Below, one piece after another: positions 1-60,807 of a stretch of 64,000 nt of DNA. Numbering within the stretch: position 1 is the first letter of the stretch; each line of letters starts with the position of its first letter. The stretch is taken from positions 1 through 64,000 of the IMG/VR virus record IMGVR_UViG_3300028840_002431; one strand, given 5' to 3'. Below the pieces are notes generated by a model. That model ran no database searches. It saw nothing but the letters and a program-made list of their open reading frames with translations, and was not told where the DNA came from. Both the position numbers and the translations under genes were made by a program.

Positions 1-5705
<5,705 letters not shown>

Positions 5706-10070: not shown

Positions 10071-10727
10071 TTAAAGACGCCAATCGATGGGCCGACCCCC
10101 GAACATTTCGAGGGCGACGTTCACCTTTGAAAAAGGCTTGCTTCCGAAGAATCCCTTGTTTGCGCTCATAGGACTTGGATGCGCTGACTCGACAACCACG
10201 TGTTTCTCGGCGTCAATAAGAGACGCCTTGTCTCTCGCGTAACGACCCCAAAGGACAAAGACCATCGGGCGGTCCCGGTCACTCAAGAGTCTGATCACCG
10301 CGTCGGTGAATGTCTCCCACCCCTGGTCTCGATGAGATCCGGCCGCGTGCGCTCTCACGGTCAAGACAGAGTTGAGGAGAAACACGCCCTGTTCAGCCCA
10401 CTTGAGTAGGTGGCCGTGGGTAGGGATAGGGCAACCAACATCGCTCCGAAGCTCCTTGAATATGTTTTGGAGACTAGGAGGAGCCAACGTTTCCGGTAGA
10501 ACAGAGAAGCACAAGCCGTGGGCTTGCTTCCGACCATGGTACGGGTCTTGCCCCAGGATAAGAACGCGGACCTCGTCGAGAGGCGTGGCGTTAAACGCTG
10601 CGAAAACAGCCCCGGACGGTGGGTATACGGTGGTTGTTGCTCGTTCTTGTCTTACGAAATTGACGAGAGCTTGGAAGTAGGGCTTCTTGAATTCGGAGCC
10701 TAAAGCGGTTTTCCAAGAGGGATGCAC
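10071..10727 (-). CDS. ung: Uracil-DNA glycosylase, family 1
   Basis: Motifs ILGQDPYH, HGLCFSV, GVFLLNSVLTV, VFVLWG, HPSPMS. Confidence 0.97.
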   Translation of the reverse strand: MHPSWKTALGSEFKKPYFQALVNFVRQERATTTVYPPSGAVFAAFNATPLDEVRVLILGQDPYHGRKQAHGLCFSVLPETLAPPSLQNIFKELRSDVGCPIPTHGHLLKWAEQGVFLLNSVLTVRAHAAGSHRDQGWETFTDAVIRLLSDRDRPMVFVLWGRYARDKASLIDAEKHVVVESAHPSPMSANKGFFGSKPFSKVNVALEMFGGRPIDWRL

Positions 10728-10745: not shown

Positions 10746-11147
10746 CTATTGGAACTTGTCCCCCACATTCTTACTGGTCGTAAAACCCAAATACCACCCT
10801 TTGTCCCGGTTCTTTTTGACGACCTTGAGCATGTCCCGCTTACTGCCTTGTTCCTGAATGACATCGCTCTCATCCACGGCGCTGTATGCTTTGCTCTTAG
10901 GGATGGCCGCCTCCTTGCCCTTCTCCTTGTTCTTCTTCTGTTGCGCTAAGAACTGAGGCGGGATCTTTCCTTTACCTTTCTCTTTCTTCTTGCCGTCGTC
11001 TTTGTCGTCCTTCTTGCTGTCGTCTTTCTTACCGTCGTCCTTGCCCTTGGATTTTTCCTTCATCTTCTTCTGTTGCTCCAAGAACTCGGGGGGCAATCCC
11101 TTTGAGTATCGTTGAAGGACGCGCTCAGCGGAAATCTTGATAGTCAT
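10746..11147 (-). CDS. Lys/Asp-rich small protein with N-terminal SAERVLQRY motif (putative head internal protein)
   Basis: GGAG SD; two P-P-x-F-L-x-Q-Q-K-K repeats flank a K/D-rich stretch. Confidence 0.7.
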   Translation of the reverse strand: MTIKISAERVLQRYSKGLPPEFLEQQKKMKEKSKGKDDGKKDDSKKDDKDDGKKKEKGKGKIPPQFLAQQKKNKEKGKEAAIPKSKAYSAVDESDVIQEQGSKRDMLKVVKKNRDKGWYLGFTTSKNVGDKFQ

Positions 11148-11173
11148 ACCTATATGCTCCTATAAACCAAAAC

Positions 11174-11782
11174 CTACTCGACCTTGATAGAAGAGATGAG
11201 TTGGTAGATCAAATCCTTCTGGTCGCCCGTGAACTTCCATCTGACGTTCACGTTCTTGTCGGCCCACTTCTTCGGATCACTCTTCTTCTCTTCTGACATA
11301 GCCAACCAGTCGGCGCACATCTCTGCGACATCCAGGTCGGGCATCTTGGTCGCATCCACCATTTCAGACGGAGGCTTATCCCGGTCGTCGCGATTTATCA
11401 GATCCACTTTCTTGGTGCAGTGGAACTCGGGGTGGTGCCGGTTGTTTTTGACATGATGCTCCGTCGCAGCATTCATCTTGTCTTCAAGGCCCTCGGGAGT
11501 GTCGAAGTCCTTGCCGTCATCCTTACACTTGTACTGCCACGTGATCCAAATGTAAGGATCGATTTCCGGCTTCTTGAGTTTACTCTGGTCGTGGTCCTTG
11601 GCCTGATCAGTTAGACCCTTGAACTTCTTAGGGTCGTGCTTCTCGATCTTCCGGCAGTATTTCTGGACCCTCTTGATGTGCTCGCTGGTTCTCTTGTCAA
11701 ACCAGTCCTTCATCTCCTTAGTAGGGAGATCAGCGTCGGCGCGTAAGAATCGCGCCACAATACGTTTGGCTGAAACACCCAT
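11174..11782 (-). CDS. DUF5662-like / HD-type metal-binding protein with N-terminal SAKRIVARF motif
   Basis: Start reassigned to ATG 11782 (TAATG overlap with the upstream stop); motifs EHI..V, HDQSK, HHVKNNRHHPE, EMCADW. Confidence 0.65.
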   Translation of the reverse strand: MGVSAKRIVARFLRADADLPTKEMKDWFDKRTSEHIKRVQKYCRKIEKHDPKKFKGLTDQAKDHDQSKLKKPEIDPYIWITWQYKCKDDGKDFDTPEGLEDKMNAATEHHVKNNRHHPEFHCTKKVDLINRDDRDKPPSEMVDATKMPDLDVAEMCADWLAMSEEKKSDPKKWADKNVNVRWKFTGDQKDLIYQLISSIKVE

Positions 11783-12426
11783 TAGTGACCGTACAACGGG
11801 CTTGTTTGGTACAAGGGTTTGCCGCCCCACTTATGGGCGCTGGCGTAGCTGGTGATCTTAACAGAGTCGCCCGGCTTTACACGCTTCTTCATGGGCTTGG
11901 AGTTTCTGGCGTACCGACCTGGGATAGGTACTACATAATCAGCCGTCTGGTCCTGCCGGACTGTCTTTTGGGCAAGCCCACGGATTTCTACGAACTTGGG
12001 GCCAATGACCTTCGTGACTTCATAGAAGTCGATATTGGTCTGGTCGTACCCCCACGACGAGTAAAGAATATCCCCGACGTTAAGGCTGTGTTGAAACTTA
12101 AGCCTCTCCTGCCGCCTCTTCTCCTTGGCTTCCAACTGCTCTCTACGATCCTTGGCTCTCTCTTCTATCTCTCGCTCCCGATGCCTCTCGTCCCGGTAGC
12201 TGTAATGGAAAAGAGGCTTGTTCTGCTTGCCCACGAAACCTATGGCGAAGTACTTGATCTTGCTGCCCCTCGGAACTTCATAGGTCCAAACAGCCATGTC
12301 TGTCCCCTTGGGGATGTAGGGGTCGGTGCCCCGAACCTCCGGGGGTAGATAAGAGGAACGAGGTAATGTGATCCGCCCTCTGTAGGCGGCGACATACCGT
12401 TCGGCAACTCGACTGGCTGTAGGCAT
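11782..12426 (-). CDS. Hypothetical protein with N-terminal ASRVAERY motif and a VGDILYSSWGYDQTNIDFYEV domain
   Basis: 214-aa ORF; the SWGYxQTNxxFY signature is recalled from phage/plasmid hypothetical proteins (not searched). Confidence 0.7.
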   Translation of the reverse strand: MPTASRVAERYVAAYRGRITLPRSSYLPPEVRGTDPYIPKGTDMAVWTYEVPRGSKIKYFAIGFVGKQNKPLFHYSYRDERHREREIEERAKDRREQLEAKEKRRQERLKFQHSLNVGDILYSSWGYDQTNIDFYEVTKVIGPKFVEIRGLAQKTVRQDQTADYVVPIPGRYARNSKPMKKRVKPGDSVKITSYASAHKWGGKPLYQTSPLYGH

Positions 12427-12427
12427 A

Positions 12428-12718
12428 TTATTTCTCGACTAGCTTGAGGGCGTCCACGTTCACCGTGTCGCTCTCGGTCTCTTTATTCAGGTCCTCGACG
12501 CTCTTTTTCTTAAGCTCTTTCACATCCAAATAATCAGCCCCGTCTCCATCCCAACCGAACCGGACTTCACGGCTTGCGCCCCAGCCGCCAAGCATACTCA
12601 TCGTGACCATGACCTTCTCAAGTCGGTCGAGCATATCCGGAGCGCTAGTGACGGTATAGGTCCTGGTTTCCTTGGATTGTTGAGCAGTCAAGAACCTGTT
12701 TAGGACTCGCTGGCGCAT
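12428..12718 (-). CDS. Hypothetical protein with N-terminal QRVLNRF motif
   Basis: 96-aa ORF immediately after the capsid-gene terminator. Confidence 0.65.
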   Translation of the reverse strand: MRQRVLNRFLTAQQSKETRTYTVTSAPDMLDRLEKVMVTMSMLGGWGASREVRFGWDGDGADYLDVKELKKKSVEDLNKETESDTVNVDALKLVEK

Positions 12719-12752
12719 CTTGTCTTAGTCGAGAGATGAAAGGGTTAAATAC

Positions 12753-12780
12753 AAAGGCCGACCCCGGAGGATCGGCCTTT
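12753..12780 (-). terminator. Intrinsic terminator after the major capsid gene
   Basis: AAAGGCCGAT-CCTCCGG-GGTCGGCCTTT hairpin followed by GTATTT on the minus strand. Confidence 0.75.
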
Positions 12781-12803
12781 GAGGGAATGTTCCAGCCTTA
12801 CGA

Positions 12804-13682
12804 CTAGACGCGAGTGACCACGATCCTGGTGAGGCCACGCGGGTTGAAAGCACCGATGCCCAGATTCTCGAAGCACGAGAAGCCGATGGTACGGGCCTTC
12901 GGATCGTCCGCCGACAGAACGGTGATCTCGGTGCGAACCGGGATACGGCCGAACTGCTCAGGCTCGCAGCAAACATACGCGAAGCCGGACGGTACCAGCC
13001 TGGATGTGATGATCTGAGCACCCCACAGAACGGCCTGGAGACCGGTCTTGAGCAAGGTGGCCTGACTCTCGATATCCAGAATGTCACGACCGAACTTACG
13101 GATGTCCGCGTAATCGACGGCGTTCATGTAGATGCGAGCGACACGGAGATCGTGCCTCTCAACCTCTGCGAACGCATCAGCGAGCACTGCGGGCGAAATG
13201 GGCGCAACCACCGGTACGTCTGGGTTGGTCTGGCCCGGAAGTGTGTCGAAGCCCGAGACAGCGATGCTGTCAAGGATTGCAAACACACGCTCGTCCTCTG
13301 CCGCCTGAATCTGAGCCTTGGCCAGATCCTGAGCACGCTCGATGAGATCGAAACGACGCTCCTTGATCTGGGTCAGGGGGATTTCAGGGTTCGAGGCAAT
13401 CTCAAACAAGGGGAAGATCACGCGACGCGGCTTCTGAATGGCGAGAATGTTCTCACCCTCTTCACCCACGACGAACGCCGTGACATCCGGGTCCTTGTCA
13501 TAGATCGGCAACGCACCGTCGGGCAGTTGCTCGACGAGGAAGGTCTTGCGACCAACGGCCGAGTAGTCCCGACGAAGACGGAGCGGTTGAATCATGGAAG
13601 CGGCGAGCTTCGCACGTCCAGCGGCCGTCTTGATGTACTCGCTGATGACTTGTTGCTTGACTTGGTTAGAAACTTGACCCAT
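12804..13682 (-). CDS. Major capsid protein (HK97 fold)
   Basis: 292 aa; position after protease, scaffold and decoration genes; FEIASNPEI, AQIQAAEDERVF and C-terminal NPRG resemble the mycobacteriophage Bxz1-type MCP as recalled. Confidence 0.9.
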   Translation of the reverse strand: MGQVSNQVKQQVISEYIKTAAGRAKLAASMIQPLRLRRDYSAVGRKTFLVEQLPDGALPIYDKDPDVTAFVVGEEGENILAIQKPRRVIFPLFEIASNPEIPLTQIKERRFDLIERAQDLAKAQIQAAEDERVFAILDSIAVSGFDTLPGQTNPDVPVVAPISPAVLADAFAEVERHDLRVARIYMNAVDYADIRKFGRDILDIESQATLLKTGLQAVLWGAQIITSRLVPSGFAYVCCEPEQFGRIPVRTEITVLSADDPKARTIGFSCFENLGIGAFNPRGLTRIVVTRV

Positions 13683-14436: not shown

Positions 14437-15642
14437 TTAGCGAGTTCCGAAAACGTCCCGAACGTCAGGGGCCGACTTCCAGAGCTTGGACAGCTTGTCG
14501 ATACCTTCGTCTCCACCAGCGGACGAAGCGCCGCCCAGCTTAGAGACACCCTCGGTAGGCTTGGTACCAACTGTCCGGGTGGAAGCGGTACGAACGGCCG
14601 CCTCCTTCTTCTCGCCCTCGTCCTCGTCCTTCTTCTCGTCCTCGCCCTGTTCAGCGGCGAAAAGCTGTTGAAGGACCTCGTCTTCTGGACCCAGGTCTTC
14701 GACGGTCACATCCATCTGGGCTGGCTCCATTTGGATATCCGTCTCAGCCGTCTGGCAACCAGCACCGGCCAGCATGTCGTCCAAAACCTGCTCGTCGGTC
14801 TGGATCACTTGCTCCTGGGGCTGAGCAGTCTGTGTCTGTTGCTGCAAAGCCTCCTGGATCATGTCCTGGACCTGTTGGCTGACTTGTTGAACGTCCTGGA
14901 CCTGGACCTGTTGGTCCTGGGCTTGCTGGGCCTGAGCTTGCTGGGCCTGGACCAGTTGCTGAATCTGCTCCTGGGCCTCTGTGAGATTCCCGGCCTGGAT
15001 GTTCTTGACCACCTCTTCGGCTGTCACATCCTTGGCTTTCTTCTCCTGGCCCTCCTCGTCGTCGTCCTTCTTCTCGCCTTCGTCTTCGGCGGCGGCTTTG
15101 TCACCCTCTTCGGCGGCGGCTTTGTCACCCTCGCCCTCGTCATCGGCCTTCTTGGACGACTGTTGATCTTGGTCCTGATCGCCACCCTGATCATCGTCAT
15201 CGTCATCGTCTTCATCGTCGCCCGCCAACCGCTTGTGGGTATCGATCAACTCTTGATCGGGCAGGTGCATGAGAGACACGGACTGATCTTCGATGGCTTC
15301 CTCAGAGGCGTCCTTCATCATGAGCTTCGCAACAGCGATGCACAGATCCGCCTTCTTGAGTAAGACCTCTTTCGACGCCGTCTTCTCCGGATGATTGAAG
15401 GTATCGCCCCTCATCTCAGGCATACCAATCTCATTCCGACGAACGTCGTCACCAGCGTACTCGGACTCCCAGGTGTTAGGAGTGTGTACGTCTTCAGCGA
15501 ACGTTGACGGATCGCCTGTGACATACTCATCCGCAGGGGGCTGGGTACGGGTCTGGTTCATGGTGTAAGGATCTGCCACTTTGTTTAGAGCAGCAGCCTT
15601 CTTCATTACTTCTTCTCGATTCCAGGTAGAACGCTCACGCAT
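14437..15642 (-). CDS. Capsid scaffolding protein
   Basis: Between protease and decoration/MCP; very acidic and Gln-rich low complexity; C-terminal LSKLWKSAPDVRDVFG candidate capsid-binding tail; many K/R-x-A sites. Confidence 0.75.
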   Translation of the reverse strand: MRERSTWNREEVMKKAAALNKVADPYTMNQTRTQPPADEYVTGDPSTFAEDVHTPNTWESEYAGDDVRRNEIGMPEMRGDTFNHPEKTASKEVLLKKADLCIAVAKLMMKDASEEAIEDQSVSLMHLPDQELIDTHKRLAGDDEDDDDDDDQGGDQDQDQQSSKKADDEGEGDKAAAEEGDKAAAEDEGEKKDDDEEGQEKKAKDVTAEEVVKNIQAGNLTEAQEQIQQLVQAQQAQAQQAQDQQVQVQDVQQVSQQVQDMIQEALQQQTQTAQPQEQVIQTDEQVLDDMLAGAGCQTAETDIQMEPAQMDVTVEDLGPEDEVLQQLFAAEQGEDEKKDEDEGEKKEAAVRTASTRTVGTKPTEGVSKLGGASSAGGDEGIDKLSKLWKSAPDVRDVFGTR

Positions 15643-15687: not shown

Positions 15688-17163
15688 TTACGACCGTCCT
15701 AAGGCGTACAGCCGACCTTTTTCCAGCAATTGGGCAGCTTCGCTGCCTGTCACTGCCCGGCCGAGCACCTGACGACAAGCCGTCAGGTAGGTCTCTACAT
15801 CTTCATATGGGCCTGTCCCACCTACATTAAGAACGGCCCTATAAACTCTATTTTCGCCAGCCATTGAGGATTTCTTAGTCAGCAAGTCAAGAACTCTGGA
15901 TACAGCTAACACCTCTCTACCCGTAAACCCAGCTTTCCTAACTAAGGACCAACCTCCGTACCTATGTAGAATTACTCCGTGAAGAACCTTTCTAGCCTCT
16001 GTCTTTCCAACAAAAGAAATCACCATTTTGGCGACCTTACGCCATCCGGGGTTCTTCAAGGCTGACCGGATCAACGTCTCATTTTGTTGGTTAGGATCGA
16101 TAGCCCGGACCTTATCCACTTCTTGCTTGTTAAGTTCTTCTCTAATGTTTTCAACGACTTGGTCGCGGACCGCGTCCGTTAAGTCGGTAATAGCTTTTTG
16201 AAGAGGGGCCTCCTGTTTAGGCTCCTCTTTCGGGGCGACATCGTCGTCAGGCACGAACTGTTGTTGCTGACCCAGCCGGGCGGCCTTGGGCATATGGTTA
16301 GGATCAGCCACCGGAGACGGACGCGAGAAAGCTATGTTCATTCGTGTTTCAAGGCCCTCAAACCCGTCGGCCGAGAGAATGTTCCTGAGGACAGCGCCCT
16401 TGAACGCCGGGTTGGCAACCCACGAGGCTTCGATGAACTTAACAGAATCAGGGTCCGAAAAATGACCACATAGCTCAGCGATTATACGTTCGATGCCCTG
16501 TTCGTCCCTGAACTTATTACCCTTGAAGTATCGTACACAGGAACATAGCTGGGCTTCGTCCAGCGCCACGTTTCCACACTTCGTGCATGTGGTGGACGAA
16601 GTGGAGCATCCCATGGACAGGGTGCCCAACTGACCGCTCTTGATGGCCCGGATCAGAGGAGCGTGTCTAAGATCGTTAGCAATCAGGATGTCGATGTATA
16701 CAGAGTCTCCAACATCCCTGGCCGCAGCATCTATGATTCGACCTTTGGATAGCTCCGGGATCTGGACGTGCTCAACATAGGACTGAGCGCCTACAAACGT
16801 CTTGAAGCTGGCCAGTAAGAGCTTGCGCTCGAAAGCGTCGTTATTGTTGTTAACAAACGGGGCCGTCTTCGGGGTAATGTAATAATCGGTATACTTACGA
16901 TCCACCTCAAAGCCGTCCACAAAGTGGCGGCCGAGAGGAGCCGTTGCCTCATCAACATCCACTGACGCCACGATGGTCGCGTGGCTCAGCATGTACTTGG
17001 CCGGATCATACTCCTGTAGGATGACCTTGGCTGTACGCTTCTGAAAGTCTGGCGAAGGAATTACGGCGTTGCTGCGCAGAGCATCCCACTCCGAAAAACT
17101 TACGTCCGGCTTTTGAACAGTTGCTTTTGCGTACTTGAGAAAAGCCATCTGACCTTTAGCCAA
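15688..17163 (-). CDS. Prohead maturation protease with Cys cluster
   Basis: FVEHVQ...KGRIIDA...YIDILIA...IKSGQLGTLSMGCS then CTKCG...CSC, typical of herpes-like phage prohead serine proteases; sits between portal and scaffold. Confidence 0.75.
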   Translation of the reverse strand: MAKGQMAFLKYAKATVQKPDVSFSEWDALRSNAVIPSPDFQKRTAKVILQEYDPAKYMLSHATIVASVDVDEATAPLGRHFVDGFEVDRKYTDYYITPKTAPFVNNNNDAFERKLLLASFKTFVGAQSYVEHVQIPELSKGRIIDAAARDVGDSVYIDILIANDLRHAPLIRAIKSGQLGTLSMGCSTSSTTCTKCGNVALDEAQLCSCVRYFKGNKFRDEQGIERIIAELCGHFSDPDSVKFIEASWVANPAFKGAVLRNILSADGFEGLETRMNIAFSRPSPVADPNHMPKAARLGQQQQFVPDDDVAPKEEPKQEAPLQKAITDLTDAVRDQVVENIREELNKQEVDKVRAIDPNQQNETLIRSALKNPGWRKVAKMVISFVGKTEARKVLHGVILHRYGGWSLVRKAGFTGREVLAVSRVLDLLTKKSSMAGENRVYRAVLNVGGTGPYEDVETYLTACRQVLGRAVTGSEAAQLLEKGRLYALGRS

Positions 17164-18176: not shown

Positions 18177-21011
18177 TTATGGAGCGAGAGGGCGGCCGTT
18201 CTCTGCCTTGCCGTGATGCACGCCAGAGGAATCATCGTTCCCGTAGGCTTGCATATACGGCTCGTCAGCTTCCGTCTGATGCGGCTGCGACGGATTCTGG
18301 AAGGTGTCCATGTACGGCTCATCGCCGTCACGCTGAAGGACCTCCGCCTTCTTGTCGCTGGCTTGCAGAATCTGAGCTTGCCGAACGGTCATAGACTTCT
18401 CACCGTAGGCGGCGGTCTCGAAATCGTCAGCAACCCGATCGATCTCGTTCACGAGTTCCTTGGCTTCTTCGAACTTCATGCCCCACTTCTCGTGATTCTC
18501 CTGGATTGTGCTGGCAATACGATCCAGACGAGCCAGAACGCGGTCGGCAGCGCTTGTGTCAAACTCCACTTTGTTGGACATCTTTCTCCTCGCTAGTTTC
18601 TCTGTGGTTGTTAACAACGTCTCATCTTGAGGTTGTGGTTCTCCTGCAAGACGAGCTAACAAACTATTATAGGCGGTCGGATGGATTACACGGTCGTACC
18701 CCTCTGTCCGAATCGCCAAATCTAGAGCCGCCCGATACTGAGCGTCACGAGGCACTCCCTCGATGTTTACTGTCAACACCGGAGCCTGGAGCCATCTCTG
18801 AGCGGACGCCAAAATCTTGGAATACTCACGATCAGTTAGGTCTTGATCCCTAGGTTGTGACCACCCTCGATAAGGATCGACCGCGTTGGGTTCAACACCC
18901 CAATAGACAGCCTGACGATTTTTACCCATCGCAGAAGTATTGAAATAAATAGAAAAAGGATTGGCTGGCCTTAATTTTCCAGCGGCGTGAAGATGCCGGA
19001 CCACCACCCTGACCCTGGCCGAACTACTGGCAGTCCGACTCCTGAAAGAGTCCCAAAACTCTTTGGCCGTCGCTTCTAACTCCTGCGGCTCCTTGCCAAA
19101 CAAGTCATATCTAGGCGGTTTTCTAGGTTCTTGCGGCTCAGAAACACCCTGCTTCGCCAACCGATCTTCGGTGGACAGGGGCACTCTGGCTTTCTTACCC
19201 TCTGCTTTTCTTTCCCTATATCTGGCCATGGCTCTCTTGAACGCGCTCTTCGCTCGACTCAATCGTTTCTTATACGCACGCATCTCTTCTTGGTACTTTT
19301 TGAGGGCGGCTTCGTATTGGCGATTGTCTTCTTCGTCTAATAAATCTTGAATTTCCCTCTGTTTGTCGGGCACCAGGGCACCCAGGTTCCGCGTGATCCT
19401 TAGTTTAAAAAGTGTAGGAATATCGTTATCGACGCTGGGGTAATTTCCCTCTCGCTCCCTGAGGAAACGCATAGCCTTACCCAGTCTTGAAACGATTTCC
19501 TTTGGGGTTTGGTACTCAGATATATGTTCTTTGGAGTCCGGGTCTAAGAACCTCTTACGGGCGTCCTGGTAATCCATAGCCTGTAGATAACCCGTGGCCA
19601 CCTTCTGAGCGGCCGGGTCGGCCCCGAACCTCTTCAAAAGTTTCTTCACGGCTTCCGGTTCGACGGGCTTGTGATCGGTCTTTTCCAAGCCGCTATAAAA
19701 CAACACTTCGGACATTTTGGCGGCTCGTTGGGATCGAGCACTTGGGTTCTCGTCCTTCCCCGACAAAGTGAAACCAGCTAACTCTTCGGCCAAGTCAGGC
19801 GGGATTCCGTCTTTCTCTATACTTTTGGCTACTGCGTTTCGGGCCGCCAAATTCATGGCCACGGTCTGGACTTGATGCCGACGCTTGGCCTCTTCTTTTT
19901 CCTCCCCCTCAGGTAGCTCGTCATAACTGACACTTTTACCGTCGATCTCCACCATCTTGGGGTCCGGGACCTCGGAGGGGTCCATCGTGTAAGACTCCAA
20001 GTTCTCGCGAAGCTTGTCGAAATCCTCCGTCTCAACAGGAATCGACTTGGCGACGTTGAAGTCCGAGATCATCTTGTTAACTTCGTCCGGGTGGATCGGC
20101 GGCCTGATCAGCATCAAATCGAGCGCCACCTCCGGAGAAAACGTTCTCCGTAGCTGGTCACGAGAGTCCTTAAATTCAGCCTGAGTGTACGGACGAGTAG
20201 GAGAGCCAGGAGGAGGTGGAAGCTTCTTTTTCTTCGAAGGCTTCTTCTTAGGTTTTTCGTCCGAGACCTCCTCTGGAATTTCCTCTTCGCTCTCCTCGTC
20301 AGGAGCCTCCTCCTCGTCAGGAGCCTCTTCGGCCGGTACCTCGCCGGACGGTGGTGCGACCGGCTTCGTTGGCCCTTTCTTTTTCTTCGGCTTGAGCTTG
20401 AGGACACGCACCAAATCGCCCAATGTCTCAATTTCCTTGGGCAATGTACGGCCGTGGAAAACGTCTTTGACCTGATCTATGGAGGTCTCCGGGTTCGATA
20501 TAGCCCACGACCCCATGTCTTTCTTCGGGTTCAAGAAATCCTTGAGAAAATTGTCAAATTGGGCGTCGTTCGCCCGCATCGCGGCCAGAGACTTAGCCGC
20601 TTCAAGGTCCGTTTCCGGGGTTTTGACAGCCTTGGGTTTCGCTTCTTCCGGTTCCGCTTCTGGCTGTGGCTTCTCTTCCGGCTCTGGTTCCTCTTTCTTG
20701 ATCTCCTCGTATTTATGAGGCTCTTTCTTGAGCTTCTCTTTCGTGACCTGGACAGTCTTACTGGGGTCCTCCTTCAACCTAACAGTAATCAGGTCCTGCC
20801 TCTTCTTGGCCGTATGGACTGACCCGCCGACATCCTTATAATTATGAGAGAGGTCCTCGTCCTTCTGAGACAAGTCCTCGTCCTTATCAGGCTCTACCCG
20901 CTCACGACGCTTGTCGTGGCGAGGGGGCTTCACCTTGGGACTCTCTCGAACCAGACGCTCAGTCTCTTCGTCTTCGCGCTGAGAATCTGACTTGGTGGCG
21001 AACCGTTCCAT
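18177..21011 (-). CDS. Large head-module protein (944 aa) with probable internal in-frame starts
   Basis: Continuous ORF between portal and protease; internal ATGs at 18929 and at 18581 (the latter with GAGGAG SD). Confidence 0.75.
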   Translation of the reverse strand: MERFATKSDSQREDEETERLVRESPKVKPPRHDKRRERVEPDKDEDLSQKDEDLSHNYKDVGGSVHTAKKRQDLITVRLKEDPSKTVQVTKEKLKKEPHKYEEIKKEEPEPEEKPQPEAEPEEAKPKAVKTPETDLEAAKSLAAMRANDAQFDNFLKDFLNPKKDMGSWAISNPETSIDQVKDVFHGRTLPKEIETLGDLVRVLKLKPKKKKGPTKPVAPPSGEVPAEEAPDEEEAPDEESEEEIPEEVSDEKPKKKPSKKKKLPPPPGSPTRPYTQAEFKDSRDQLRRTFSPEVALDLMLIRPPIHPDEVNKMISDFNVAKSIPVETEDFDKLRENLESYTMDPSEVPDPKMVEIDGKSVSYDELPEGEEKEEAKRRHQVQTVAMNLAARNAVAKSIEKDGIPPDLAEELAGFTLSGKDENPSARSQRAAKMSEVLFYSGLEKTDHKPVEPEAVKKLLKRFGADPAAQKVATGYLQAMDYQDARKRFLDPDSKEHISEYQTPKEIVSRLGKAMRFLREREGNYPSVDNDIPTLFKLRITRNLGALVPDKQREIQDLLDEEDNRQYEAALKKYQEEMRAYKKRLSRAKSAFKRAMARYRERKAEGKKARVPLSTEDRLAKQGVSEPQEPRKPPRYDLFGKEPQELEATAKEFWDSFRSRTASSSARVRVVVRHLHAAGKLRPANPFSIYFNTSAMGKNRQAVYWGVEPNAVDPYRGWSQPRDQDLTDREYSKILASAQRWLQAPVLTVNIEGVPRDAQYRAALDLAIRTEGYDRVIHPTAYNSLLARLAGEPQPQDETLLTTTEKLARRKMSNKVEFDTSAADRVLARLDRIASTIQENHEKWGMKFEEAKELVNEIDRVADDFETAAYGEKSMTVRQAQILQASDKKAEVLQRDGDEPYMDTFQNPSQPHQTEADEPYMQAYGNDDSSGVHHGKAENGRPLAP

Positions 21012-21040: not shown

Positions 21041-22834
21041 CTACCACCGCTCCTCTTCACCGCCGCCCTCGGGTTTCGGCACCTCTTTAAGCTTCAATGC
21101 CTTTTGGACCCTATCGACCACGTCTGTGTTTTCGATGATACGGTCTGCCACGCCATTGTAGATGCCCCGGAGAGCTTCGTTGAACAGGGCGTCGTTGACC
21201 GTAAACATGTCCTTCTCTAACTTGAGCTTGGTGTCGTCCGGATCGATGTTGAACATCTCCAAAATGAGACTGATGTCGATCGACCCCTTCTGGTAGAGAT
21301 TGAACAGGGCGTCATAAGTGTCCTGGGAGTCCCGCAGCGGTAGTCTCGTGAACGAGAGACGAGGGTATAACACCACCTCACCACCCCAGGCGTTCTTCTC
21401 CACAAACCCCTTGCGCCGGGCAATGGGCTTAAAGAGATAGTTCTCCACATATTCCTGAACCATCTCCCGCAAGAACATGTACCGGGTGTTTATGACTTCG
21501 AGCTTGAGCCTGTCTCCGGAGTACAACGTCTCTCCGGATAACAGGCTCTCAGTGACACCCAGACCCGCGTACAGTTGCTTGTCCGTGATGTCATATTCGC
21601 TCGACAAATCCAGAAGCCGGTCCCTGGCTCCGATTTCTTCCCAACGGACTTCATAGTTGGTGACAATCGAATAGTCAGGATCGACGAGGGCCAAATCGAC
21701 TTGCTCCCTCAAATCGTTAACATCCATCTCGGAAATTCTGTCGCCCCAGACGATACGCTTGGGCGTCATCGCCCTGGAAGCAATCTGGGTCTGAGCCTGA
21801 CGTAGCTTTTCCCGGTAGTACAACGTCCGGAGAACGCGGTCTAAGATGCTCTGCCCCAGGTCTTCGCCAGCACCACGTCGCCCGGCTAGGTAATAACAGA
21901 ATGACCCCTCATCCGGGTCTGTGCCCAAGGGAATGAGTTTACCGTTTTCAATATGATCCCGTACCTCTTCAGGCATCTCGCGGACCATCTCTTCCGCGAA
22001 CTCGTCACCGGACTTAGCCTGATTTATAAGAGCGCGGTCCCGCTCGGCCGGTATCAACTCAACACGTAGCTTATCCGTGAACGAATAAGTCGTGACTTTT
22101 ACCTGATCAATGGGCAGGAGGATGAGCCGATCCCATCCCTGATAGTACTCCTGGTAGTAAGATAGCTCCTGATCCTCACGGTCCTCTCGTTCGACCAGAC
22201 CTACCTCAGGCTCTTCTTTAGCCTCACCTGACTCCGTGACAATCGACTTAACACCAATAGCCTTCTCGTCATATCCGATGTCATCCGGAACCTTGACCTC
22301 GGAGTCTTCAGCAAACACGAAGACTCCGCCATCCAACCAGTAGTGGTGAACCATTGTGACGAGCCGCTGGAACAACTTTATACGGTCACACATGGTCGTG
22401 AAGAACCACAGAATGTAGTTGGCGTAGTCGTGAGGGTCTTTGAAGCCTTCCGGGCAAGTAGTTGGCTTCGGGGTAGCCAACCGGACCTTCGACAAGGGTA
22501 GTTCCGTATGCAGATCGATGGACTGCCCCACGATCGGGTCGGTGTTATAAAAGTGCCTGTAGATCTCCCGCTTCTCACGTAGAGACTGCGGCAACTCCAG
22601 AAAATCGGTAGACAACTGCGGGGAGAAGAACTGCCCGGCAGAAGCCATCGTCGTATTCCCGCTGCCGTAGCCGCCAAAGTCGCAATTGGCTATCTTCTGG
22701 AGCTTACGAGCCTCTAGCTCCTTTGGGGTCAAAGAACTGACCGGGCCTTTGGCAATGTACGGGGAAGGCATCGCCCGTGTGACCACGGTCGCGTAAGGAG
22801 CAGAAGTGGCGTTCGTGAACTTTCTAGTGGGCAT
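21041..22834 (-). CDS. Portal protein
   Basis: 597 aa downstream of terminase; YRHFYNTDPIVGQSIDLHTELP, SILDRVLRTLYYREKLRQAQ and LYAGLGVTESLLSG match large-phage portal patterns. Confidence 0.8.
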   Translation of the reverse strand: MPTRKFTNATSAPYATVVTRAMPSPYIAKGPVSSLTPKELEARKLQKIANCDFGGYGSGNTTMASAGQFFSPQLSTDFLELPQSLREKREIYRHFYNTDPIVGQSIDLHTELPLSKVRLATPKPTTCPEGFKDPHDYANYILWFFTTMCDRIKLFQRLVTMVHHYWLDGGVFVFAEDSEVKVPDDIGYDEKAIGVKSIVTESGEAKEEPEVGLVEREDREDQELSYYQEYYQGWDRLILLPIDQVKVTTYSFTDKLRVELIPAERDRALINQAKSGDEFAEEMVREMPEEVRDHIENGKLIPLGTDPDEGSFCYYLAGRRGAGEDLGQSILDRVLRTLYYREKLRQAQTQIASRAMTPKRIVWGDRISEMDVNDLREQVDLALVDPDYSIVTNYEVRWEEIGARDRLLDLSSEYDITDKQLYAGLGVTESLLSGETLYSGDRLKLEVINTRYMFLREMVQEYVENYLFKPIARRKGFVEKNAWGGEVVLYPRLSFTRLPLRDSQDTYDALFNLYQKGSIDISLILEMFNIDPDDTKLKLEKDMFTVNDALFNEALRGIYNGVADRIIENTDVVDRVQKALKLKEVPKPEGGGEEERW

Positions 22835-23261: not shown

Positions 23262-23825
23262 TCACAGAGTGACCTGGATACCTAAGAAATGCTGATTGAC
23301 GGGCTGTGGCTTTTGTGCCGTCCGCCCAACGTTGAGTGCTGGAGCGAGAGGACTTCCAGAAAGGGTCAACTCGTCCTCCTTGGTCCACAGACCGCGCAAC
23401 GAGAAATACAAAGTATCGTTGACGTTATACACCAGTGGAACGAGCGGGCCGCCGCCTGTCCGAGACGCATACGTGTAATGCTCGTACGAAGAAGTCGATA
23501 TTAAGGCGCTCCCTCCACACAAGACAGCGTCCCCGTAGACAAGTTGTTGGCGGGTCATGGCCGTGTACTGGTCGGCCGACTCGTCCGATCCCCACAATAA
23601 GAACCCACCGAACTGCCCAGAGGAATACGTTACCACGAACTCGTCGGCGTCTGAGTTCACCCACTGGACCCCTTGGCCTCCCGGCCAACCGCCTTGTAAC
23701 ATCGCGTCGTCTACGCGAACCATGAAGGTGTCATCCTTCATGAACATCACGCAATCTCGGCCCCGGATTATATCAAACCCGTGAAAATCGACTTGAAACG
23801 AACCTATGGGCGGTGGAAAAGGCAT
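23262..23825 (-). CDS. Decoration-protein-like paralog 3 of 3
   Basis: GWPGGQGV.W, GFLLWGSDES, YEHYTY, YFSLRGLWT shared with two upstream neighbours. Confidence 0.75.
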   Translation of the reverse strand: MPFPPPIGSFQVDFHGFDIIRGRDCVMFMKDDTFMVRVDDAMLQGGWPGGQGVQWVNSDADEFVVTYSSGQFGGFLLWGSDESADQYTAMTRQQLVYGDAVLCGGSALISTSSYEHYTYASRTGGGPLVPLVYNVNDTLYFSLRGLWTKEDELTLSGSPLAPALNVGRTAQKPQPVNQHFLGIQVTL

Positions 23826-24864: not shown

Positions 24865-24866
24865 CG

Positions 24867-25123: not shown

Positions 25124-27166
25124 CTATCTCACACCACGAAGACGTAACCCCAAACGGCGCGGGTCTACACGATCCGTGAAACCTCCATGCTTGCGTGCTC
25201 GCATCATTTGATAGCGACCCGGCGTCATGCCCGCGCCCATGTGGCGGGCACCCTCCTTGCCGTACACGAATTTCTCATCGCGCATACGCTCCGAAGTTAA
25301 CCATACCGCTCGCACAAAAGCGTCACTACGGTCGTCGTGGTGGCCCACGGTCTGCGGAGCCTCCACGACCACGATGTTCCTGGACATCTGTTGCGCTTGA
25401 AGTTCCAGTAGCTCCTCAATGAACGCCGAATGCCTACTACCTTGTTTGACTGGGAAATCGTACAAACGGAGACTCTCGTCGAACATCAGCATCTTCGTGT
25501 TCTGGTAGATACGTGACGTGAGGTCCCTCTGGAAGTACTCGCTCTTGAACTGTGTCAGCCCCTTCTTGAGAAGAGCCTGTTCCAACGGAATCCCGTTCCA
25601 ACGGTCAAAAAGACCGTGTGTTATGTGGAACCTCTTTGTTAGAACGTCGATCCAGTGGCCGATTTCGTCGAAGTCTAGACGGCTCGCGTCGCCCAAGAGT
25701 TTGCAGTACGGGGTTGTGAAATTATTACCCAGGTGTGGGTTCGACTCGCGCCAGTCAACACCGGCTTGCCAGTATTCGTGGTAAGCCAGCACAATCTTGT
25801 TGTTTTCGGCGCATGTTATCGCGATGGCCGTGCCGTCTCCCATCAACCCGATATCTATACCCATCTGGTAAGGGTAACGCGGAATCCCGACGACCTGAGG
25901 ACGCAAGTTGGGATCTACACATGAAACAAGATCCTCTTCCCGCTCGATCCAACCACGCACACGATCCGAGAACTGCGCTCCATGCTCTGTCATGAACACG
26001 TTGGCGTCCTCGTGGTACTTCTGCTTGTAGTAAGACTTCGGGATTGTCGGGTTCACCTCCCAGGTAGGGGCCTGGATTGCCAAAATGTTCTCAGACCCGA
26101 CACCCCTGCTCATCGCCAGATGGAATAGATCGTAGAACTTACCCACCTTATTGAGCGGAGACGAAATTGTGATGATTCGAGACTCGACAGGGTACATTTC
26201 CCCGTCGGACATCTTCATCGGCATCCCGTCGTCTCCCTTGGGAGAGAAGGCAGCCGTGCTGGGCGTTACAGCGTCGTATATGTCCTTGGCCGACGACTGG
26301 CCCGTGTCCTGGTAGTGGGCCATCTCGTCCATAATCACGACGATATTACCCGACCCACGAAGGCCCTTGGCTATACAACTCTTGAAGGTGACACGTAGAG
26401 TTGCCTTACCATTGAAACTGACGAACTTGCCGTCTTGGTGACGAAGCGTGGGTCCGTAGCGATCCAGGTCGTAGGGGGTCCTGAACTGAATGTGTGACAG
26501 GGTGTTGTTGGCGATATACGGCTTGAAGTAGTCACACTTCGCTAAGTGTGTAGTCACCTCGTTGAAAAGAATACCCGCCTGATCCTTATCGGTGGCCACC
26601 GACGTGATCTGGATGCGGTTCCCGTTAGGTAGCCCGTAATACTCCTGGGGGTTGAATAAATTTAGTAAACGGTAGACTTCGTAGCTGGCGAATATACCAC
26701 TGAGTGTTGTCTTCCCGGCACGACGGCCGATGGCCAAAACTAACTCGCGCCGTTCGTGATCTTGCTCCCCGATGTTACAACGACCCTCGTTGTACAGATA
26801 ATGGAGATACTCTTTCTCGGTGAACTCGTAGAGGAGATCCTCACCGAACATGTCGGTGACTCTTATGGTCTTTTCTTCGTCGTCTAACGGAAGATGGTAG
26901 TAGAGCTTGACGATAAAGCGCTGGGCCGGGAACAACTTCATCCCGATTCCCCAGGCTTGCTCGATGTACTCTATGATATTAAAAATACGGGGCTGAAACG
27001 GACGTACCTCGTCCTCGTCAAAACCGTCCGGGTCGAGTTCCCCGTCCGCTATCTTGTTCTGTAGCTGGATATCAAGCTGTTTTTGCTCTACAGCTTGCTT
27101 GGCGCGAACTCCAGCATCTCTAATGAGTGCTGAAACCCCTGCTCCGGATCGCTTTCTCTGTGCCAC
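25124..27166 (-). CDS. terL: Terminase large subunit
   Basis: Walker A IGRRAGKT, Walker B IVVIMDE, RNase H-like MGIDIG...D and HHDDRSDA. Confidence 0.92.
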   Translation of the reverse strand: MAQRKRSGAGVSALIRDAGVRAKQAVEQKQLDIQLQNKIADGELDPDGFDEDEVRPFQPRIFNIIEYIEQAWGIGMKLFPAQRFIVKLYYHLPLDDEEKTIRVTDMFGEDLLYEFTEKEYLHYLYNEGRCNIGEQDHERRELVLAIGRRAGKTTLSGIFASYEVYRLLNLFNPQEYYGLPNGNRIQITSVATDKDQAGILFNEVTTHLAKCDYFKPYIANNTLSHIQFRTPYDLDRYGPTLRHQDGKFVSFNGKATLRVTFKSCIAKGLRGSGNIVVIMDEMAHYQDTGQSSAKDIYDAVTPSTAAFSPKGDDGMPMKMSDGEMYPVESRIITISSPLNKVGKFYDLFHLAMSRGVGSENILAIQAPTWEVNPTIPKSYYKQKYHEDANVFMTEHGAQFSDRVRGWIEREEDLVSCVDPNLRPQVVGIPRYPYQMGIDIGLMGDGTAIAITCAENNKIVLAYHEYWQAGVDWRESNPHLGNNFTTPYCKLLGDASRLDFDEIGHWIDVLTKRFHITHGLFDRWNGIPLEQALLKKGLTQFKSEYFQRDLTSRIYQNTKMLMFDESLRLYDFPVKQGSRHSAFIEELLELQAQQMSRNIVVVEAPQTVGHHDDRSDAFVRAVWLTSERMRDEKFVYGKEGARHMGAGMTPGRYQMMRARKHGGFTDRVDPRRLGLRLRGVR

Positions 27167-27169
27167 ACG

Positions 27170-27781
27170 TCACCGAACCAAATTTTCTGCTTTCTCTTCC
27201 CAACCCTCCATCTCGGTCTGGAGTTTGTTGAAGAAGAGATCAAGCTGCTCAGGGGCTAAGGTTTCCTCGGCGGCGACACGAATCATATCGGTCCACAGTT
27301 TGAAAATCTTTTGGAACTTCTCGCTGTAGATATCCACCTGATCGAAGCCGATCTTACGCATCTCCATTTCAATGTCAGCGATTTTCTTCATCGCATCGAT
27401 ACGACGCGCCGAGATCCTGGTGATGTCCTTCCCCATTATCTCGTTCTGTTTACGCTGATAATGCAAAGCCGCTGCTTCGCGGGCGACCTCTGCCTTAAGG
27501 GTCGCCAACAGCTTTATAGGATCGGCTTCTGCCGCGCTCTTAACGACCGGGTCATCCGCGATGAACTCTTCCCGCTCCTCAGAAGTCTCCTCGTAGTAGT
27601 CCAACTGATCCTGGCTCGGCTTGTTGAACTTGCTGCCAGGGGGACGAGTGCGTTGCCCGGCCGCTCGACCGCCAGCCGGTACCTTGTCCTTGTTGTTCGC
27701 GGCCAGGAACAGCTTCGGACGCGGTTTCTCCTCTGTCCCCTCTTCCGGTACCTTTCCTTCTTCGTCTGGCATATTAGTCAT
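27170..27781 (-). CDS. Candidate terminase small subunit
   Basis: 203-aa helical protein immediately upstream of terL; positional inference only. Confidence 0.45.
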   Translation of the reverse strand: MTNMPDEEGKVPEEGTEEKPRPKLFLAANNKDKVPAGGRAAGQRTRPPGSKFNKPSQDQLDYYEETSEEREEFIADDPVVKSAAEADPIKLLATLKAEVAREAAALHYQRKQNEIMGKDITRISARRIDAMKKIADIEMEMRKIGFDQVDIYSEKFQKIFKLWTDMIRVAAEETLAPEQLDLFFNKLQTEMEGWEEKAENLVR

Positions 27782-28178
27782 TACCTTCTACCGGAGGAGT
27801 CCCACCCCCGCCTTCCGTTTCGATCAGGTATTGGCTCAGGTTGCTTACAGTGTCGTACCCCTTGTCTTTGGGGACCTGTTTGTCCAACACCTTCTCCATG
27901 TCCGTGTAGTCGTCAGCGTCTCCCGGCCACCCCTTGGTAACGTAATTGTATACGCTGACCTGAGAGGGTAACGGTTTGAAAACGTCTTTCGGACGGACAT
28001 CGTCTTTGTCTGGTTTCACCGTATCTTCACGCTCGTCCGTCGAGCCGTAATCCTCAACGACCTCGCGAGAAAGATCCTTTGGCTTGTTTACAGGCTGGGT
28101 AGAATCCCGCGCCTCTTCGCGGGCACTTTCCGCGATTTGAAAACGAGCCGCGACACGTAATGTTAAAGGAGATGTCAA
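27774..28178 (-). CDS. Hypothetical acidic protein with N-terminal LRVAARFQIA motif
   Basis: 134 aa; ATGA overlap with the upstream gene. Confidence 0.7.
   Translation of the reverse strand: MTSPLTLRVAARFQIAESAREEARDSTQPVNKPKDLSREVVEDYGSTDEREDTVKPDKDDVRPKDVFKPLPSQVSVYNYVTKGWPGDADDYTDMEKVLDKQVPKDKGYDTVSNLSQYLIETEGGGGTPPVEGND

Positions 28179-58774: not shown

Positions 58775-60807
<2,033 letters not shown>

What the first reader, a model, noticed from the sequence alone, without database searches (positions are those of the whole stretch)
10746..12718. Candidate capsid-targeting signal: shared N-terminal R-[VI]-x-x-R-[FY]-x-x-A peptide on unrelated proteins
Seen: four consecutive genes after the MCP terminator, plus one near terminase, start with the same motif but have unrelated bodies: MTIKISAERVLQRYSKG (11147), MGVSAKRIVARFLRA-DAD (11782), MPTASRVAERYVAA-YRG (12426), MRQRVLNRFLTA-QQ (12718) and MTSPLTLRVAARFQIA-ES (28178). 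In four of five an Ala lies exactly 3 residues after the aromatic. A similar string (SAADRVLARLDRIA) follows the internal start at 18581. I saw no such N-terminus in the replication module. Known: T4 internal proteins carry a 10-residue N-terminal capsid-targeting sequence that the prohead protease removes. Inference: a T4-CTS-like addressing and cleavage peptide for loading an interchangeable set of cargo proteins into the head and injecting them with the DNA, which could be a programmable protein-delivery tag.
Basis: partly seen in the sequence, partly recalled or inferred. Interest (0 to 1): 0.85.

Follow-up and report, generated by a model that had tools for sequence, protein, structure and literature searches.

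The report
Shared N-terminal tag on huge-phage proteins
Five unrelated proteins in the head and packaging region of an uncultivated ~416 kb phage start with the same 9-residue helical tag, which recurs on many other proteins in related huge phages and most likely docks them to one shared partner, possibly to load them into the capsid, though no experiment has tested this.

Summary
R-[VI]-x-x-R-[FY]-x-x-[AG] lies within 4-9 residues of the start of five unrelated minus-strand ORFs. Four follow the capsid gene and its hairpin; one precedes the terminase genes. No other ORF in the window comes close, and codons differ, so selection acts on the protein.

The window is the first 64 kb of a 416 kb phage related to LR745208.1, Tunturi_5 and phage G. 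In relatives the tag sits on at least 21 unrelated bodies. It also sits at domain junctions of a large protein encoded next to the portal; some relatives fuse effector-type enzymes in front of it. The tag is conserved on the small protein beside the terminase. Homologues of two window bodies carry other short N-terminal tags, or none, in other phages. AlphaFold models the tag as a low-confidence appendage.

The T4-like capsid-targeting reading is plausible but unproven. Cleavage and packaging were not testable. Carriers are enriched just after the capsid gene, yet many lie far from head genes, and the tag also occurs internally and at C-termini. The safest statement is a modular docking helix for a conserved phage partner. 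Best guess, at 0.45: it loads accessory and effector proteins into the head.

The parts
12428..12718 (-). 96-aa carrier 1; motif RVLNRFLTA at residues 4-12 (nt 12683-12709)
   Evidence: no Pfam or PHROG family
11782..12426 (-). 214-aa carrier 2; motif RVAERYVAA at residues 6-14 (nt 12385-12411); body is phrog_37844, from about residue 54
   Evidence: homologues carry other tags or none
11174..11782 (-). 202-aa carrier 3; motif RIVARFLRA at residues 7-15 (nt 11738-11764); body is DUF5662, with an HD-like His/Asp pattern read by eye
   Evidence: Pfam 1.6e-30, domain from residue 28; AF2 pLDDT 91.8 with residues 1-15 below 50; homologue N-termini
10746..11147 (-). 133-aa carrier 4; weaker motif RVLQRYSKG at residues 9-17 (nt 11097-11123); Lys/Asp/Glu-rich low-complexity body
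27774..28178 (-). 134-aa carrier 5 (TTG start); motif RVAARFQIA at residues 8-16 (nt 28131-28157); clade-restricted family kept just upstream of the terminase genes
12719..12803 (-). Terminator-like 13-bp hairpin between the capsid gene and carrier 1
   Evidence: -36.9 kcal/mol, z = -5.4; not picked up by the consensus scan
12804..13682 (-). Major capsid protein (HK97-type)
   Evidence: phrog_2522 1.9e-49; 84% identical to LR745208.1, 48% to Tunturi_5, 40% to phage G gp27
18177..21011 (-). 944-aa protein next to the portal. In relatives the RV motif follows 'NYKNVGGS' (window nt 20820-20843; this copy lacks the motif there). This copy has a motif-like site KVATGYLQA (19578-19604) and a degenerate site RVVVRHLHA (18984-19010).
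   Evidence: polyvalent relatives
21041..22834 (-). Portal protein
   Evidence: phrog_16240 3.2e-30
15688..17163 (-). Candidate prohead protease
   Evidence: phrog_18299 2.5e-09; no PDB sequence match
14437..15642 (-). Very acidic 401-aa protein in the scaffold position; a candidate receptor
   Evidence: position and composition only; inference
25124..27166 (-). Large terminase subunit
   Evidence: phrog_2 1.4e-17, phrog_17415, phrog_9

Best explanation
The 9-residue motif R-V-[A/V/L]-x-R-[F/Y]-[L]-x-A is a short amphipathic helix. Arg1, Val2, Arg5, Phe/Tyr6 and Ala9 fall on one face. It works as a portable docking tag.

In this clade of huge phages the tag is attached by a short linker to the N-terminus of many unrelated accessory proteins. 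It is also built into the domain junctions of the large protein encoded next to the portal. The most likely role is to bind one conserved component of the assembling head (scaffold, capsid interior, portal or the portal-adjacent protein). Tagged enzymes and small proteins would then be enclosed in the procapsid and delivered with the DNA, as with the T4 capsid-targeting sequence.

Shown here: the motif exists, it is modular, it is under protein-level selection, it lies outside the folded bodies, it is conserved across the clade, it is enriched after the capsid gene, and it occurs in polyvalent-type proteins.

Inferred: the binding partner, incorporation into the head, any cleavage at or after the conserved Ala, and injection.
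For: - Five window ORFs score 20.6-29 bits; the rest score 8.2 or less. Codons are not conserved.
- There are 21 distinct body clusters among 43 unique carriers in relatives. All carry the motif at the N-terminus except the portal-adjacent protein.
- In 80 capsid-gene loci, 23 N-terminal carriers lie within 6.4 kb downstream of the capsid gene. None lies in 504 kb upstream apart from the portal-adjacent protein.
- Relatives of that protein carry Topo IB, 2H, PAP2, nucleotidyltransferase or ART-PolyVal domains, with the motif at the junction. PMC5512222 predicts such polyvalent proteins to be packaged and injected.
- Solo carriers include 2H-SAK (4.5e-19), DUF5662, and proteins with an HExxH signature read by eye (one has only a sub-threshold Peptidase_Mx match).
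- The motif is kept in 75 of 104 homologues of the terminase-adjacent protein.
- AF2 models the tag as a low-confidence helix separate from the body. In the portal-adjacent protein it is an isolated helix between disordered stretches.
- The same bodies carry different tags in other lineages. In a 524 kb phage, 11 of 16 same-strand genes flanking the capsid gene share another tag.
- T4 precedent: diverse internal proteins share only the CTS, MKTYQEFIAE (PMC3012670).
Against: - There are no virion data for any member of this clade.
- In LR745208.1, carriers lie at 36, 65, 203 and 463 kb as well as 388 and 417 kb, with the capsid gene at 396 kb. Their neighbours are NAPRTase, a metallophosphatase, TnpB and an HATPase.
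- In a 398 kb relative, carriers lie about 160-190 kb from the capsid gene.
- Only 14 of 48 relatives with enough downstream sequence have a carrier after the capsid gene.
- The motif also occurs at C-termini (L110/L139, L166) and at internal positions, unlike a classical cleaved N-terminal propeptide.
- There is no T4-type L/I-x-E site and no conserved residue after the Ala.
- Phage G and Tunturi_5 head regions lack the motif.
Confidence: 0.45

Rival explanations
1. The tag is a general docking helix for a hub that is not part of the virion. Candidates are a phage or host complex in the infected cell, such as a chaperone, a replication or transcription factory, or the polyvalent protein after it has been injected. 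The tag would gather accessory enzymes at that hub rather than load them into the head.
For: - Many carriers are encoded far from head genes, among metabolic and mobile-element genes.
- The motif works in N-terminal, internal and C-terminal positions, as docking motifs do.
- One carrier sits in the replication module of a relative (L088).
Against: - Carriers are enriched immediately after the capsid gene, on the same strand and behind an attenuating hairpin.
- The motif is built into the portal-adjacent protein and into the conserved protein beside the terminase.
- An analogous tag is concentrated around the capsid gene in a 524 kb phage.
Confidence: 0.25
2. The motif is mainly a processing signal. 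A phage protease, either the prohead protease or one of the tagged zincin-like enzymes, recognises and cuts at or after ...[F/Y]-L-x-A. This would remove a propeptide from solo proteins and separate the domains of polyvalent proteins. Activation or release would be the function, not addressing.
For: - The Ala at position 9 is nearly invariant, and L-x-A has the same shape as the herpesvirus assemblin site V/L-x-A|S (from my own knowledge) and the T4 site L/I-x-E| (from my own knowledge; the sources read say only that the CTS is cleaved off).
- The motif sits exactly at domain junctions in the large proteins.
- It occurs in tandem copies in some proteins.
- Several carriers have an HExxH signature read by eye.
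Against: - Nine conserved positions on one helical face are more than a cleavage site needs.
- C-terminal copies, with 16-17 residues left after the motif, would release only a stub.
- No cleavage data exist, and the protease family could not be placed.
Confidence: 0.15
3. The motif is a nucleic-acid feature at gene starts, such as a translation-initiation element or a recombination linker for swapping gene cassettes. The peptide would be a by-product.
For: It lies at gene starts in a run of tightly coupled small genes whose content varies between relatives.
Against: - Only 8 of 40 identical residues share a codon, and nucleotide identity is 47%.
- Arg is encoded by CGA, CGT, CGC, CGG and AGG.
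- The distance from the start codon varies from 3 to 8 residues.
- The motif also occurs deep inside long ORFs.
Confidence: 0.03
4. The motif is a chance or compositional similarity, or the remnant of a recent local duplication of one gene start.
For: The motif is short and built from common residues. An unrelated protein family has the same 9-mer inside a folded domain (about 40 small viral contigs).
Against: - About 0.03 hits are expected per shuffled proteome; five are seen, all N-terminal.
- It recurs on 21 body clusters in dozens of phages.
- It is kept in 75 of 104 homologues at 42-69% identity.
Confidence: 0.02

Closest known systems
T4 capsid-targeting sequence (CTS, MKTYQEFIAE) of internal proteins IPI-III and Alt
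   Same: A short peptide of 10-20 residues at the N-terminus is the only thing shared by otherwise unrelated, fast-evolving accessory proteins. The cargo set differs between related phages. The cargo includes enzymes and anti-defence proteins.
   Different: The RV-type tag has no sequence similarity to the CTS and no L/I-x-E cleavage site. It also occurs internally and at C-termini. Binding to a scaffold core, cleavage and packaging are shown for T4 (PMC3012670; bioRxiv 10.1101/2021.01.19.427310) and untested here. The tag of AT-rich relatives (MKIYKIAE...) looks a little like the T4 CTS, but that is only a lead.
Polyvalent proteins of phages and conjugative elements (Iyer, Burroughs, Anand, de Souza, Aravind 2017; PMC5512222)
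   Same: Relatives of the window's 944-aa portal-adjacent protein join Topo IB, 2H phosphoesterase, PAP2, nucleotidyltransferase or ART-PolyVal domains in one chain, encoded beside the portal. Solo carriers have the same kinds of domain.
   Different: The window's own copy has no recognisable enzyme domain. That paper does not describe a short shared addressing motif. Here the effectors are mostly separate genes, each carrying the tag.
N-terminal propeptides of head and ejection proteins in phiKZ-like giant phages (SPN3US gp53/gp54, gp47; PMC5694885)
   Same: Conserved N-termini on diverged head proteins are thought to target them to the prohead before cleavage.
   Different: Those propeptides are mostly over 100 residues, are shared only by paralogues, end in A/S/G-x-E, and are backed by mass spectrometry.
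Phage P1 Dar antirestriction proteins with N-terminal packaging determinants (discussed in PMC9024508)
   Same: Large anti-defence proteins are loaded into the head through N-terminal determinants and injected.
   Different: No common short motif is shared among the P1 cargo. Loading is hierarchical, through DarA and Hdf.
Encapsulin cargo-loading peptides
   Same: A short peptide docks cargo to the inner face of an HK97-fold shell.
   Different: They are usually C-terminal, Gly/Leu-rich and extended rather than an Arg-rich helix, and there is no DNA packaging or injection.

Membership tests
T4-type capsid-targeting sequence | A short N-terminal peptide shared by otherwise unrelated proteins of one phage | tested here: met
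   Five window ORFs; 21 body clusters in relatives
T4-type capsid-targeting sequence | Sequence similarity to MKTYQEFIAE | tested here: not met
   The RV-type consensus shares no ordered residues with it. Only the MKIYKIAE-type tag of AT-rich DUF5662 homologues looks similar.
T4-type capsid-targeting sequence | Ends in the prohead-protease site (L/I-x-E in T4) and is removed on maturation | tested here: not met
   No conserved Glu. The conserved end is [F/Y]-L-x-A with variable residues after it. Actual cleavage is not testable with these tools.
T4-type capsid-targeting sequence | Necessary and sufficient for incorporation into the prohead core | not testable with these tools
   Needs virion proteomics or reporter fusions
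T4-type capsid-targeting sequence | Cargo genes are hypervariable between related phages | tested here: met
   The post-capsid-gene island differs between relatives. 14 of 48 loci have carriers, with different bodies. LR745208.1 has a 1229-aa ORF at that position instead.
Polyvalent proteins (PMC5512222) | Two or more domains with disparate enzymatic activities in one polypeptide | tested here: not met
   The window's 944-aa protein has no Pfam or PHROG enzyme domain. Relatives L164, L128, L157 and L146 do meet this feature.
Polyvalent proteins (PMC5512222) | Encoded among portal, terminase and head genes | tested here: met
   The gene 18177-21011 lies directly downstream of the portal gene 21041-22834.
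Tat (twin-arginine) signal peptide | Adjacent RR in S/T-R-R-x-F-L-K, followed by a hydrophobic h-region and an A-x-A site | tested here: not met
   There is a single Arg before F/Y-L, the second Arg is four residues upstream, and polar or charged residues follow.
Pfam DUF5662 (carrier 3 body) | Match above the gathering score | tested here: met
   106.2 bits against a cutoff of 27; residues 28-196
HD-domain phosphohydrolases (carrier 3 body) | HD fold | tested here: inconclusive
   The H...HD...HH...D pattern was read by eye. Foldseek lists HD-domain proteins only at E above 1.

The most novel reading that the evidence does not exclude
Huge phages of this superclade may use a set of short, lineage-specific addressing helices that can be swapped for one another. 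Four kinds were seen here:
- the RV type described above;
- a 27-residue 'TLRSKLIRLAHENPALRPHLLPLLKEAG' type;
- an 'IAKELLKIAKEL' type;
- an 'MKIIKIA / MNWYKKA' type.

Each would match a receptor in its own head. Any protein given the right tag, including enzymes that counter host defences, would be packaged and injected with the DNA. The same effector bodies would be re-tagged as they move between lineages. That would give a natural set of orthogonal protein-packaging tags.
Probability: 0.3. Interest if true: 0.85.

Novelty: new variant of a known kind. Interest (0 to 1): 0.72.

Why it matters
If the tag addresses proteins to the capsid, simply reading N-termini would identify the injected protein arsenal of uncultivated huge phages. 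It would show that the T4 internal-protein strategy is widespread and has diversified into several tag types. It would also offer short peptides for loading chosen proteins into very large capsids.

If the partner is not the capsid, the tag still marks a set of co-recruited accessory proteins, most of unknown function, that share one hub. That is a useful handle on genomes in which most genes have no annotation.

The tags match no Pfam family, and a search for six example tag strings found no paper describing them.

Tried and rejected
- **Nucleic-acid element:** rejected on codon usage.
- **Tat signal:** rejected on sequence.
- **The 18581 string:** rejected as an instance.
- **Foldseek against PDB:** no hit at E of 0.001 or better for the portal-adjacent protein model or the DUF5662 model.
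- **PDB sequence search with the candidate protease:** nothing useful, so its family and likely specificity remain unknown.
- **Pfam and PHROGs:** no family for carriers 1, 4 and 5 or for most carriers in relatives.
- **ESM Atlas for carrier 2:** only unnamed phage clusters; the weak LPD29 structural row (TM 0.42) was not taken as evidence.
- **Scaffold C-terminus:** I considered whether it (KLSKLWKSA) mimics the tag. It scores below 0 on the PSSM, so I dropped the idea.
- **Replication-gene search for contrast loci:** returned only 5 loci, 3 of them identical to the window. I therefore fetched the whole of LR745208.1 instead.
- **First motif-first DNA pattern:** The accepted pattern finds only CGN/CTN-coded R-V-A-[A/S]-R-[F/Y]-L-x-A, and about 40 of its 103 hits are an unrelated family with the 9-mer inside a domain.
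- **Phage G particle proteome:** the supplement is not held, so I could not check whether its two 'MKRLIKK' proteins are in virions.
- **Profile search for the 134-aa family:** found only the same clade (22 clusters) and no AT-rich variants, so it did not test whether the tag types are equivalent.
Full report
**What the window is**

All genes of interest are on the minus strand. The ORF at 12804-13682 is an HK97-type major capsid protein (phrog_2522, 1.9e-49). It is 84% identical to a 485 kb uncultured phage (LR745208.1), 48% to Tunturiibacter phage Tunturi_5 and 40% to Bacillus phage G gp27.

The window equals the first 64 kb of IMG/VR contig 3300028840_002431, which is 416,539 bp long. PHROGs identify the portal (21041-22834), large terminase (25124-27166) and a candidate prohead protease (15688-17163).

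The gene order on the minus strand is:
- a 652-aa protein
- carrier 5
- a 203-aa protein
- the terminase
- small genes
- the portal
- a 944-aa protein
- two small genes
- the protease
- an acidic 401-aa protein in the scaffold position
- a 212-aa protein
- the capsid gene
- a hairpin
- carriers 1-4
- a likely uracil-DNA glycosylase

Yes. The strict pattern has five matches in all six reading frames, and four sit at the very start of coding-strand ORFs. A position-specific matrix gives 20.6-29.0 bits for the five N-termini and at most 8.2 for the other 53 ORFs. A matrix trained without the window still ranks them as the top five, and shuffled proteomes give 0.03 hits of 15 bits or more.

The five copies use different codons: only 8 of 40 identical residues share a codon. 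The constraint is therefore on the peptide and not on DNA or RNA.

The four genes after the capsid gene abut or overlap one another (TAATG, TAAtATG). They follow a perfect 13-bp hairpin, the usual arrangement for lower-abundance products read through from the capsid transcript.

**The tag is modular**

- Pfam DUF5662 begins at residue 28 of carrier 3, and phrog_37844 begins at about residue 54 of carrier 2.
- AlphaFold2 with 50 homologues models the DUF5662 body at pLDDT above 90 and residues 1-15 below 50, with a short helix at 5-11.
- Across the window, 75 capsid-gene loci, two replication loci and the whole of LR745208.1, I found 43 unique carriers falling into 21 body clusters with no detectable similarity to each other. 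All carry the motif at the N-terminus except one cluster.
- Bodies with a family assignment are DUF5662, a 2H-SAK phosphoesterase (4.5e-19), phrog_13953, phrog_37844 and Phage_L5_gp82. Several paralogues have an HExxH signature read by eye, one of them with only a sub-threshold Peptidase_Mx match.
- The consensus is [A/S]-x-R-V-[A/V/L]-x-R-[F/Y]-L-x-A. In a helix, positions 1, 2, 5, 6 and 9 share one face.

**The exception is informative**

The 944-aa protein encoded directly after the portal belongs to a family in which about half the members carry the motif some 75 residues from the start, right after a conserved 'NYKNVGGS'. Many carry a second copy about 270 residues from the end. The window's copy lacks the first site but has a motif-like KVATGYLQA and a degenerate RVVVRHLHA.

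A motif-first DNA scan of IMG/VR found further relatives in which enzyme domains lie next to that junction:
- nucleotidyltransferase, 2H/LigT, PAP2 and topoisomerase IB fused in front of it (L164);
- 2H and Topo IB fused in front of it (L128);
- Topo IB fused in front of it (L157);
- ART-PolyVal lying downstream of it (L146).

These are polyvalent proteins in the sense of Iyer et al. 2017, who predicted that such proteins are packaged in the head and injected (PMC5512222).

AF2 places the motif of this family on a short helix between disordered stretches.

The same scan found copies at C-termini (L110/L139, L166) and at a junction after a domain whose C-terminal end resembles the LR745208.1 HExxH paralogue (L188). 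The motif is therefore a portable module and not a strictly N-terminal signal.

**One carrier is a core gene**

The 134-aa protein just upstream of the terminase genes has 104 homologues, all apparently from this clade. In 75 of them the motif scores 14 bits or more at the N-terminus. An exhaustive profile search found only 22 representative clusters.

This conserved protein keeps the motif across the family, which suggests that whatever recognises it is also conserved in the clade.

**Position in genomes**

In the 80 capsid-gene loci, 23 N-terminal carriers lie downstream of the capsid gene, all within 6.4 kb. None lies in the 504 kb upstream apart from the portal-adjacent protein. However, only 14 of 48 loci with at least 4 kb downstream have one.

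In the complete LR745208.1 genome, carriers lie at 36, 65, 203, 388, 417 and 463 kb, with the capsid gene at 396 kb. The neighbours of the distant ones are metabolic or mobile-element genes.

A 398 kb relative has carriers roughly 160 and 190 kb from its capsid gene.

Within the window the split is 5 of 30 against 0 of 28 ORFs, p = 0.03. There is enrichment near head genes, but it is not exclusive.

**An unexpected generalisation**

Homologues of carrier 3 (DUF5662) in AT-rich metagenomic phages almost never have the RV motif. Instead, 78 of 120 start with M-x(0-2)-hydrophobic-hydrophobic-[K/R]-x-[A/S], for example MKIYKIAE, MSWYKKAKE or MNWYKKA. That pattern never occurs inside the bodies.

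In a 524 kb phage (GC 39%), 11 of the 16 same-strand genes flanking the capsid gene start this way. None of six other genes in the locus does.

Homologues of carrier 2 show the same body preceded by one of the following:
- the RV tag, sometimes in tandem;
- an 'LRxKLIRLAxxNPxLRxxLLPLL' tag;
- an 'IAKELLKIAKEL' tag;
- a 45-residue extension;
- nothing at all.

LR745208.1 has nine proteins with a nearly identical 27-residue 'TLRSKLIRLAHENPALRPHLLPLLKEAG' tag. Eight are N-terminal, and two lie in the head module, one of them about 1.3 kb upstream of the capsid gene next to its decoration-like gene.

The pattern therefore has two parts. Within one genome, one tag sits on many bodies. Across lineages, one body carries different tags. 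This is what a tag-receptor addressing system would look like. It matches the T4 picture in which diverse internal proteins share only the CTS (PMC3012670; CTS sequence and single cleavage). Conserved N-termini on diverged head paralogues have been noted in SPN3US (PMC5694885).

**What remains inference**

I could not test binding, packaging, cleavage or injection.
- The T4 cleavage consensus is absent.
- The idea that ...L-x-A is a protease site rests only on its similarity in shape to known sites.
- The protease family could not be placed.
- Fold searches were uninformative.
- No Pfam family covers any of the tags.
- A search for six example tag strings found no paper describing them.

**Verdict**

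The capsid-targeting interpretation is the best single explanation, at about 0.45, but it is not established. The main rivals are a docking tag for a partner outside the virion (0.25) and a processing signal (0.15).

Noticed in passing
LR745208.1 (L089-L098): about 15.2, 20.7, 31.2, 226.1, 351.5, 351.8, 390.9, 398.5 and 432.5 kb; e.g. L001:18719-19123:+: Nine proteins share a nearly identical 27-residue tag, 'TLRSKLIRLAHENPALRPHLLPLLKEAG'. Eight copies are N-terminal and one is internal, all on unrelated bodies. The window has none. The same tag type precedes some homologues of window carrier 2.
   Followed up: partly
L204/L205 (524 kb phage contigs), 3686-14206 +; proteins P0002-P0120: AT-rich huge phages use another N-terminal tag (MKIIKIA, MKLIRTA, MNWYKKA). 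It is on 11 of 16 same-strand genes flanking the capsid gene and on 78 of 120 DUF5662 homologues. It looks a little like the T4 CTS MKTYQEFIAE. Phage G has 'MKRLIKKAS' (L003:14930) and a TTG-started 'KRLIKKSN' (L003:2767).
   Followed up: partly
P0199, P0240, P0189, P0212 and other homologues of window 11782-12426: A third tag type, 'IAKELLKIAKEL', and a 45-residue extension precede the same body in other lineages. About 35 of 120 homologues, shorter and mostly from smaller contigs, have no extension.
   Followed up: no
window 3-5705 (-): One open frame of more than 1,900 codons runs off the left end of the window. It encodes about 361 Gly-x-y triplets ([10 protein letters not shown]...), a collagen-like protein that may be a fibre. 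The long plus-strand 'PVAPVGPV' ORFs are its mirror image.
   Followed up: partly
L164:2123-7387:-, L128:5296-9261:+, L157:3905-7942:-, L146:2562-6305:-: In other huge phages the portal-adjacent protein carries nucleotidyltransferase, 2H/LigT, PAP2, topoisomerase IB or ART-PolyVal domains. A type IB topoisomerase core in a presumed head protein is unusual.
   Followed up: partly
window 20900-21011 (-) and all 24 members of alignment A1: The first 40 or so residues of the portal-adjacent protein, 'ATK...ERE.EEAERLVRP.PK.KPPR.D.RRE', are the most conserved part of the family. They are followed by an Asp-rich linker and 'NYKNVGGS'. Function unknown.
   Followed up: no
L001:21080-24769:+ (LR745208.1): In this relative the position after the capsid gene is taken by a 1229-aa ORF with repeated endonuclease-like segments and Cys-rich C-terminal repeats, instead of the tagged small genes.
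   Followed up: no
window 10071-10727 (-): The gene right after the four carriers has the GQDPYH motif of family-1 uracil-DNA glycosylases. This was read by eye and not run against a library.
   Followed up: no
window 23262-24915 (-): Three adjacent ORFs of 172-190 aa with similar-looking N-terminal segments (R[D/S]RDV.[IV]F.K.L) lie between the terminase and the portal and may be tandem paralogues. No PHROG hit for the one tested.
   Followed up: no
L102, L103, L106, L109 and about 35 other small IMG/VR contigs: An unrelated, highly conserved protein of about 430 aa contains 'CNEESYHRVAARYLTAATG' in its middle. This is a chance occurrence of the 9-mer in a folded domain, which shows that a motif search alone is not specific.
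   Followed up: partly
L097:19851-21152:-, L098:19773-21209:-, L202:16631-17713:-: TnpB/IS605 (Cas12f-like) genes sit close to tagged genes in two huge-phage genomes.
   Followed up: no
window 58775-60430 (-): The N-terminus of this 551-aa ORF looks like a GroEL-type chaperonin. This was read by eye and not tested.
   Followed up: no
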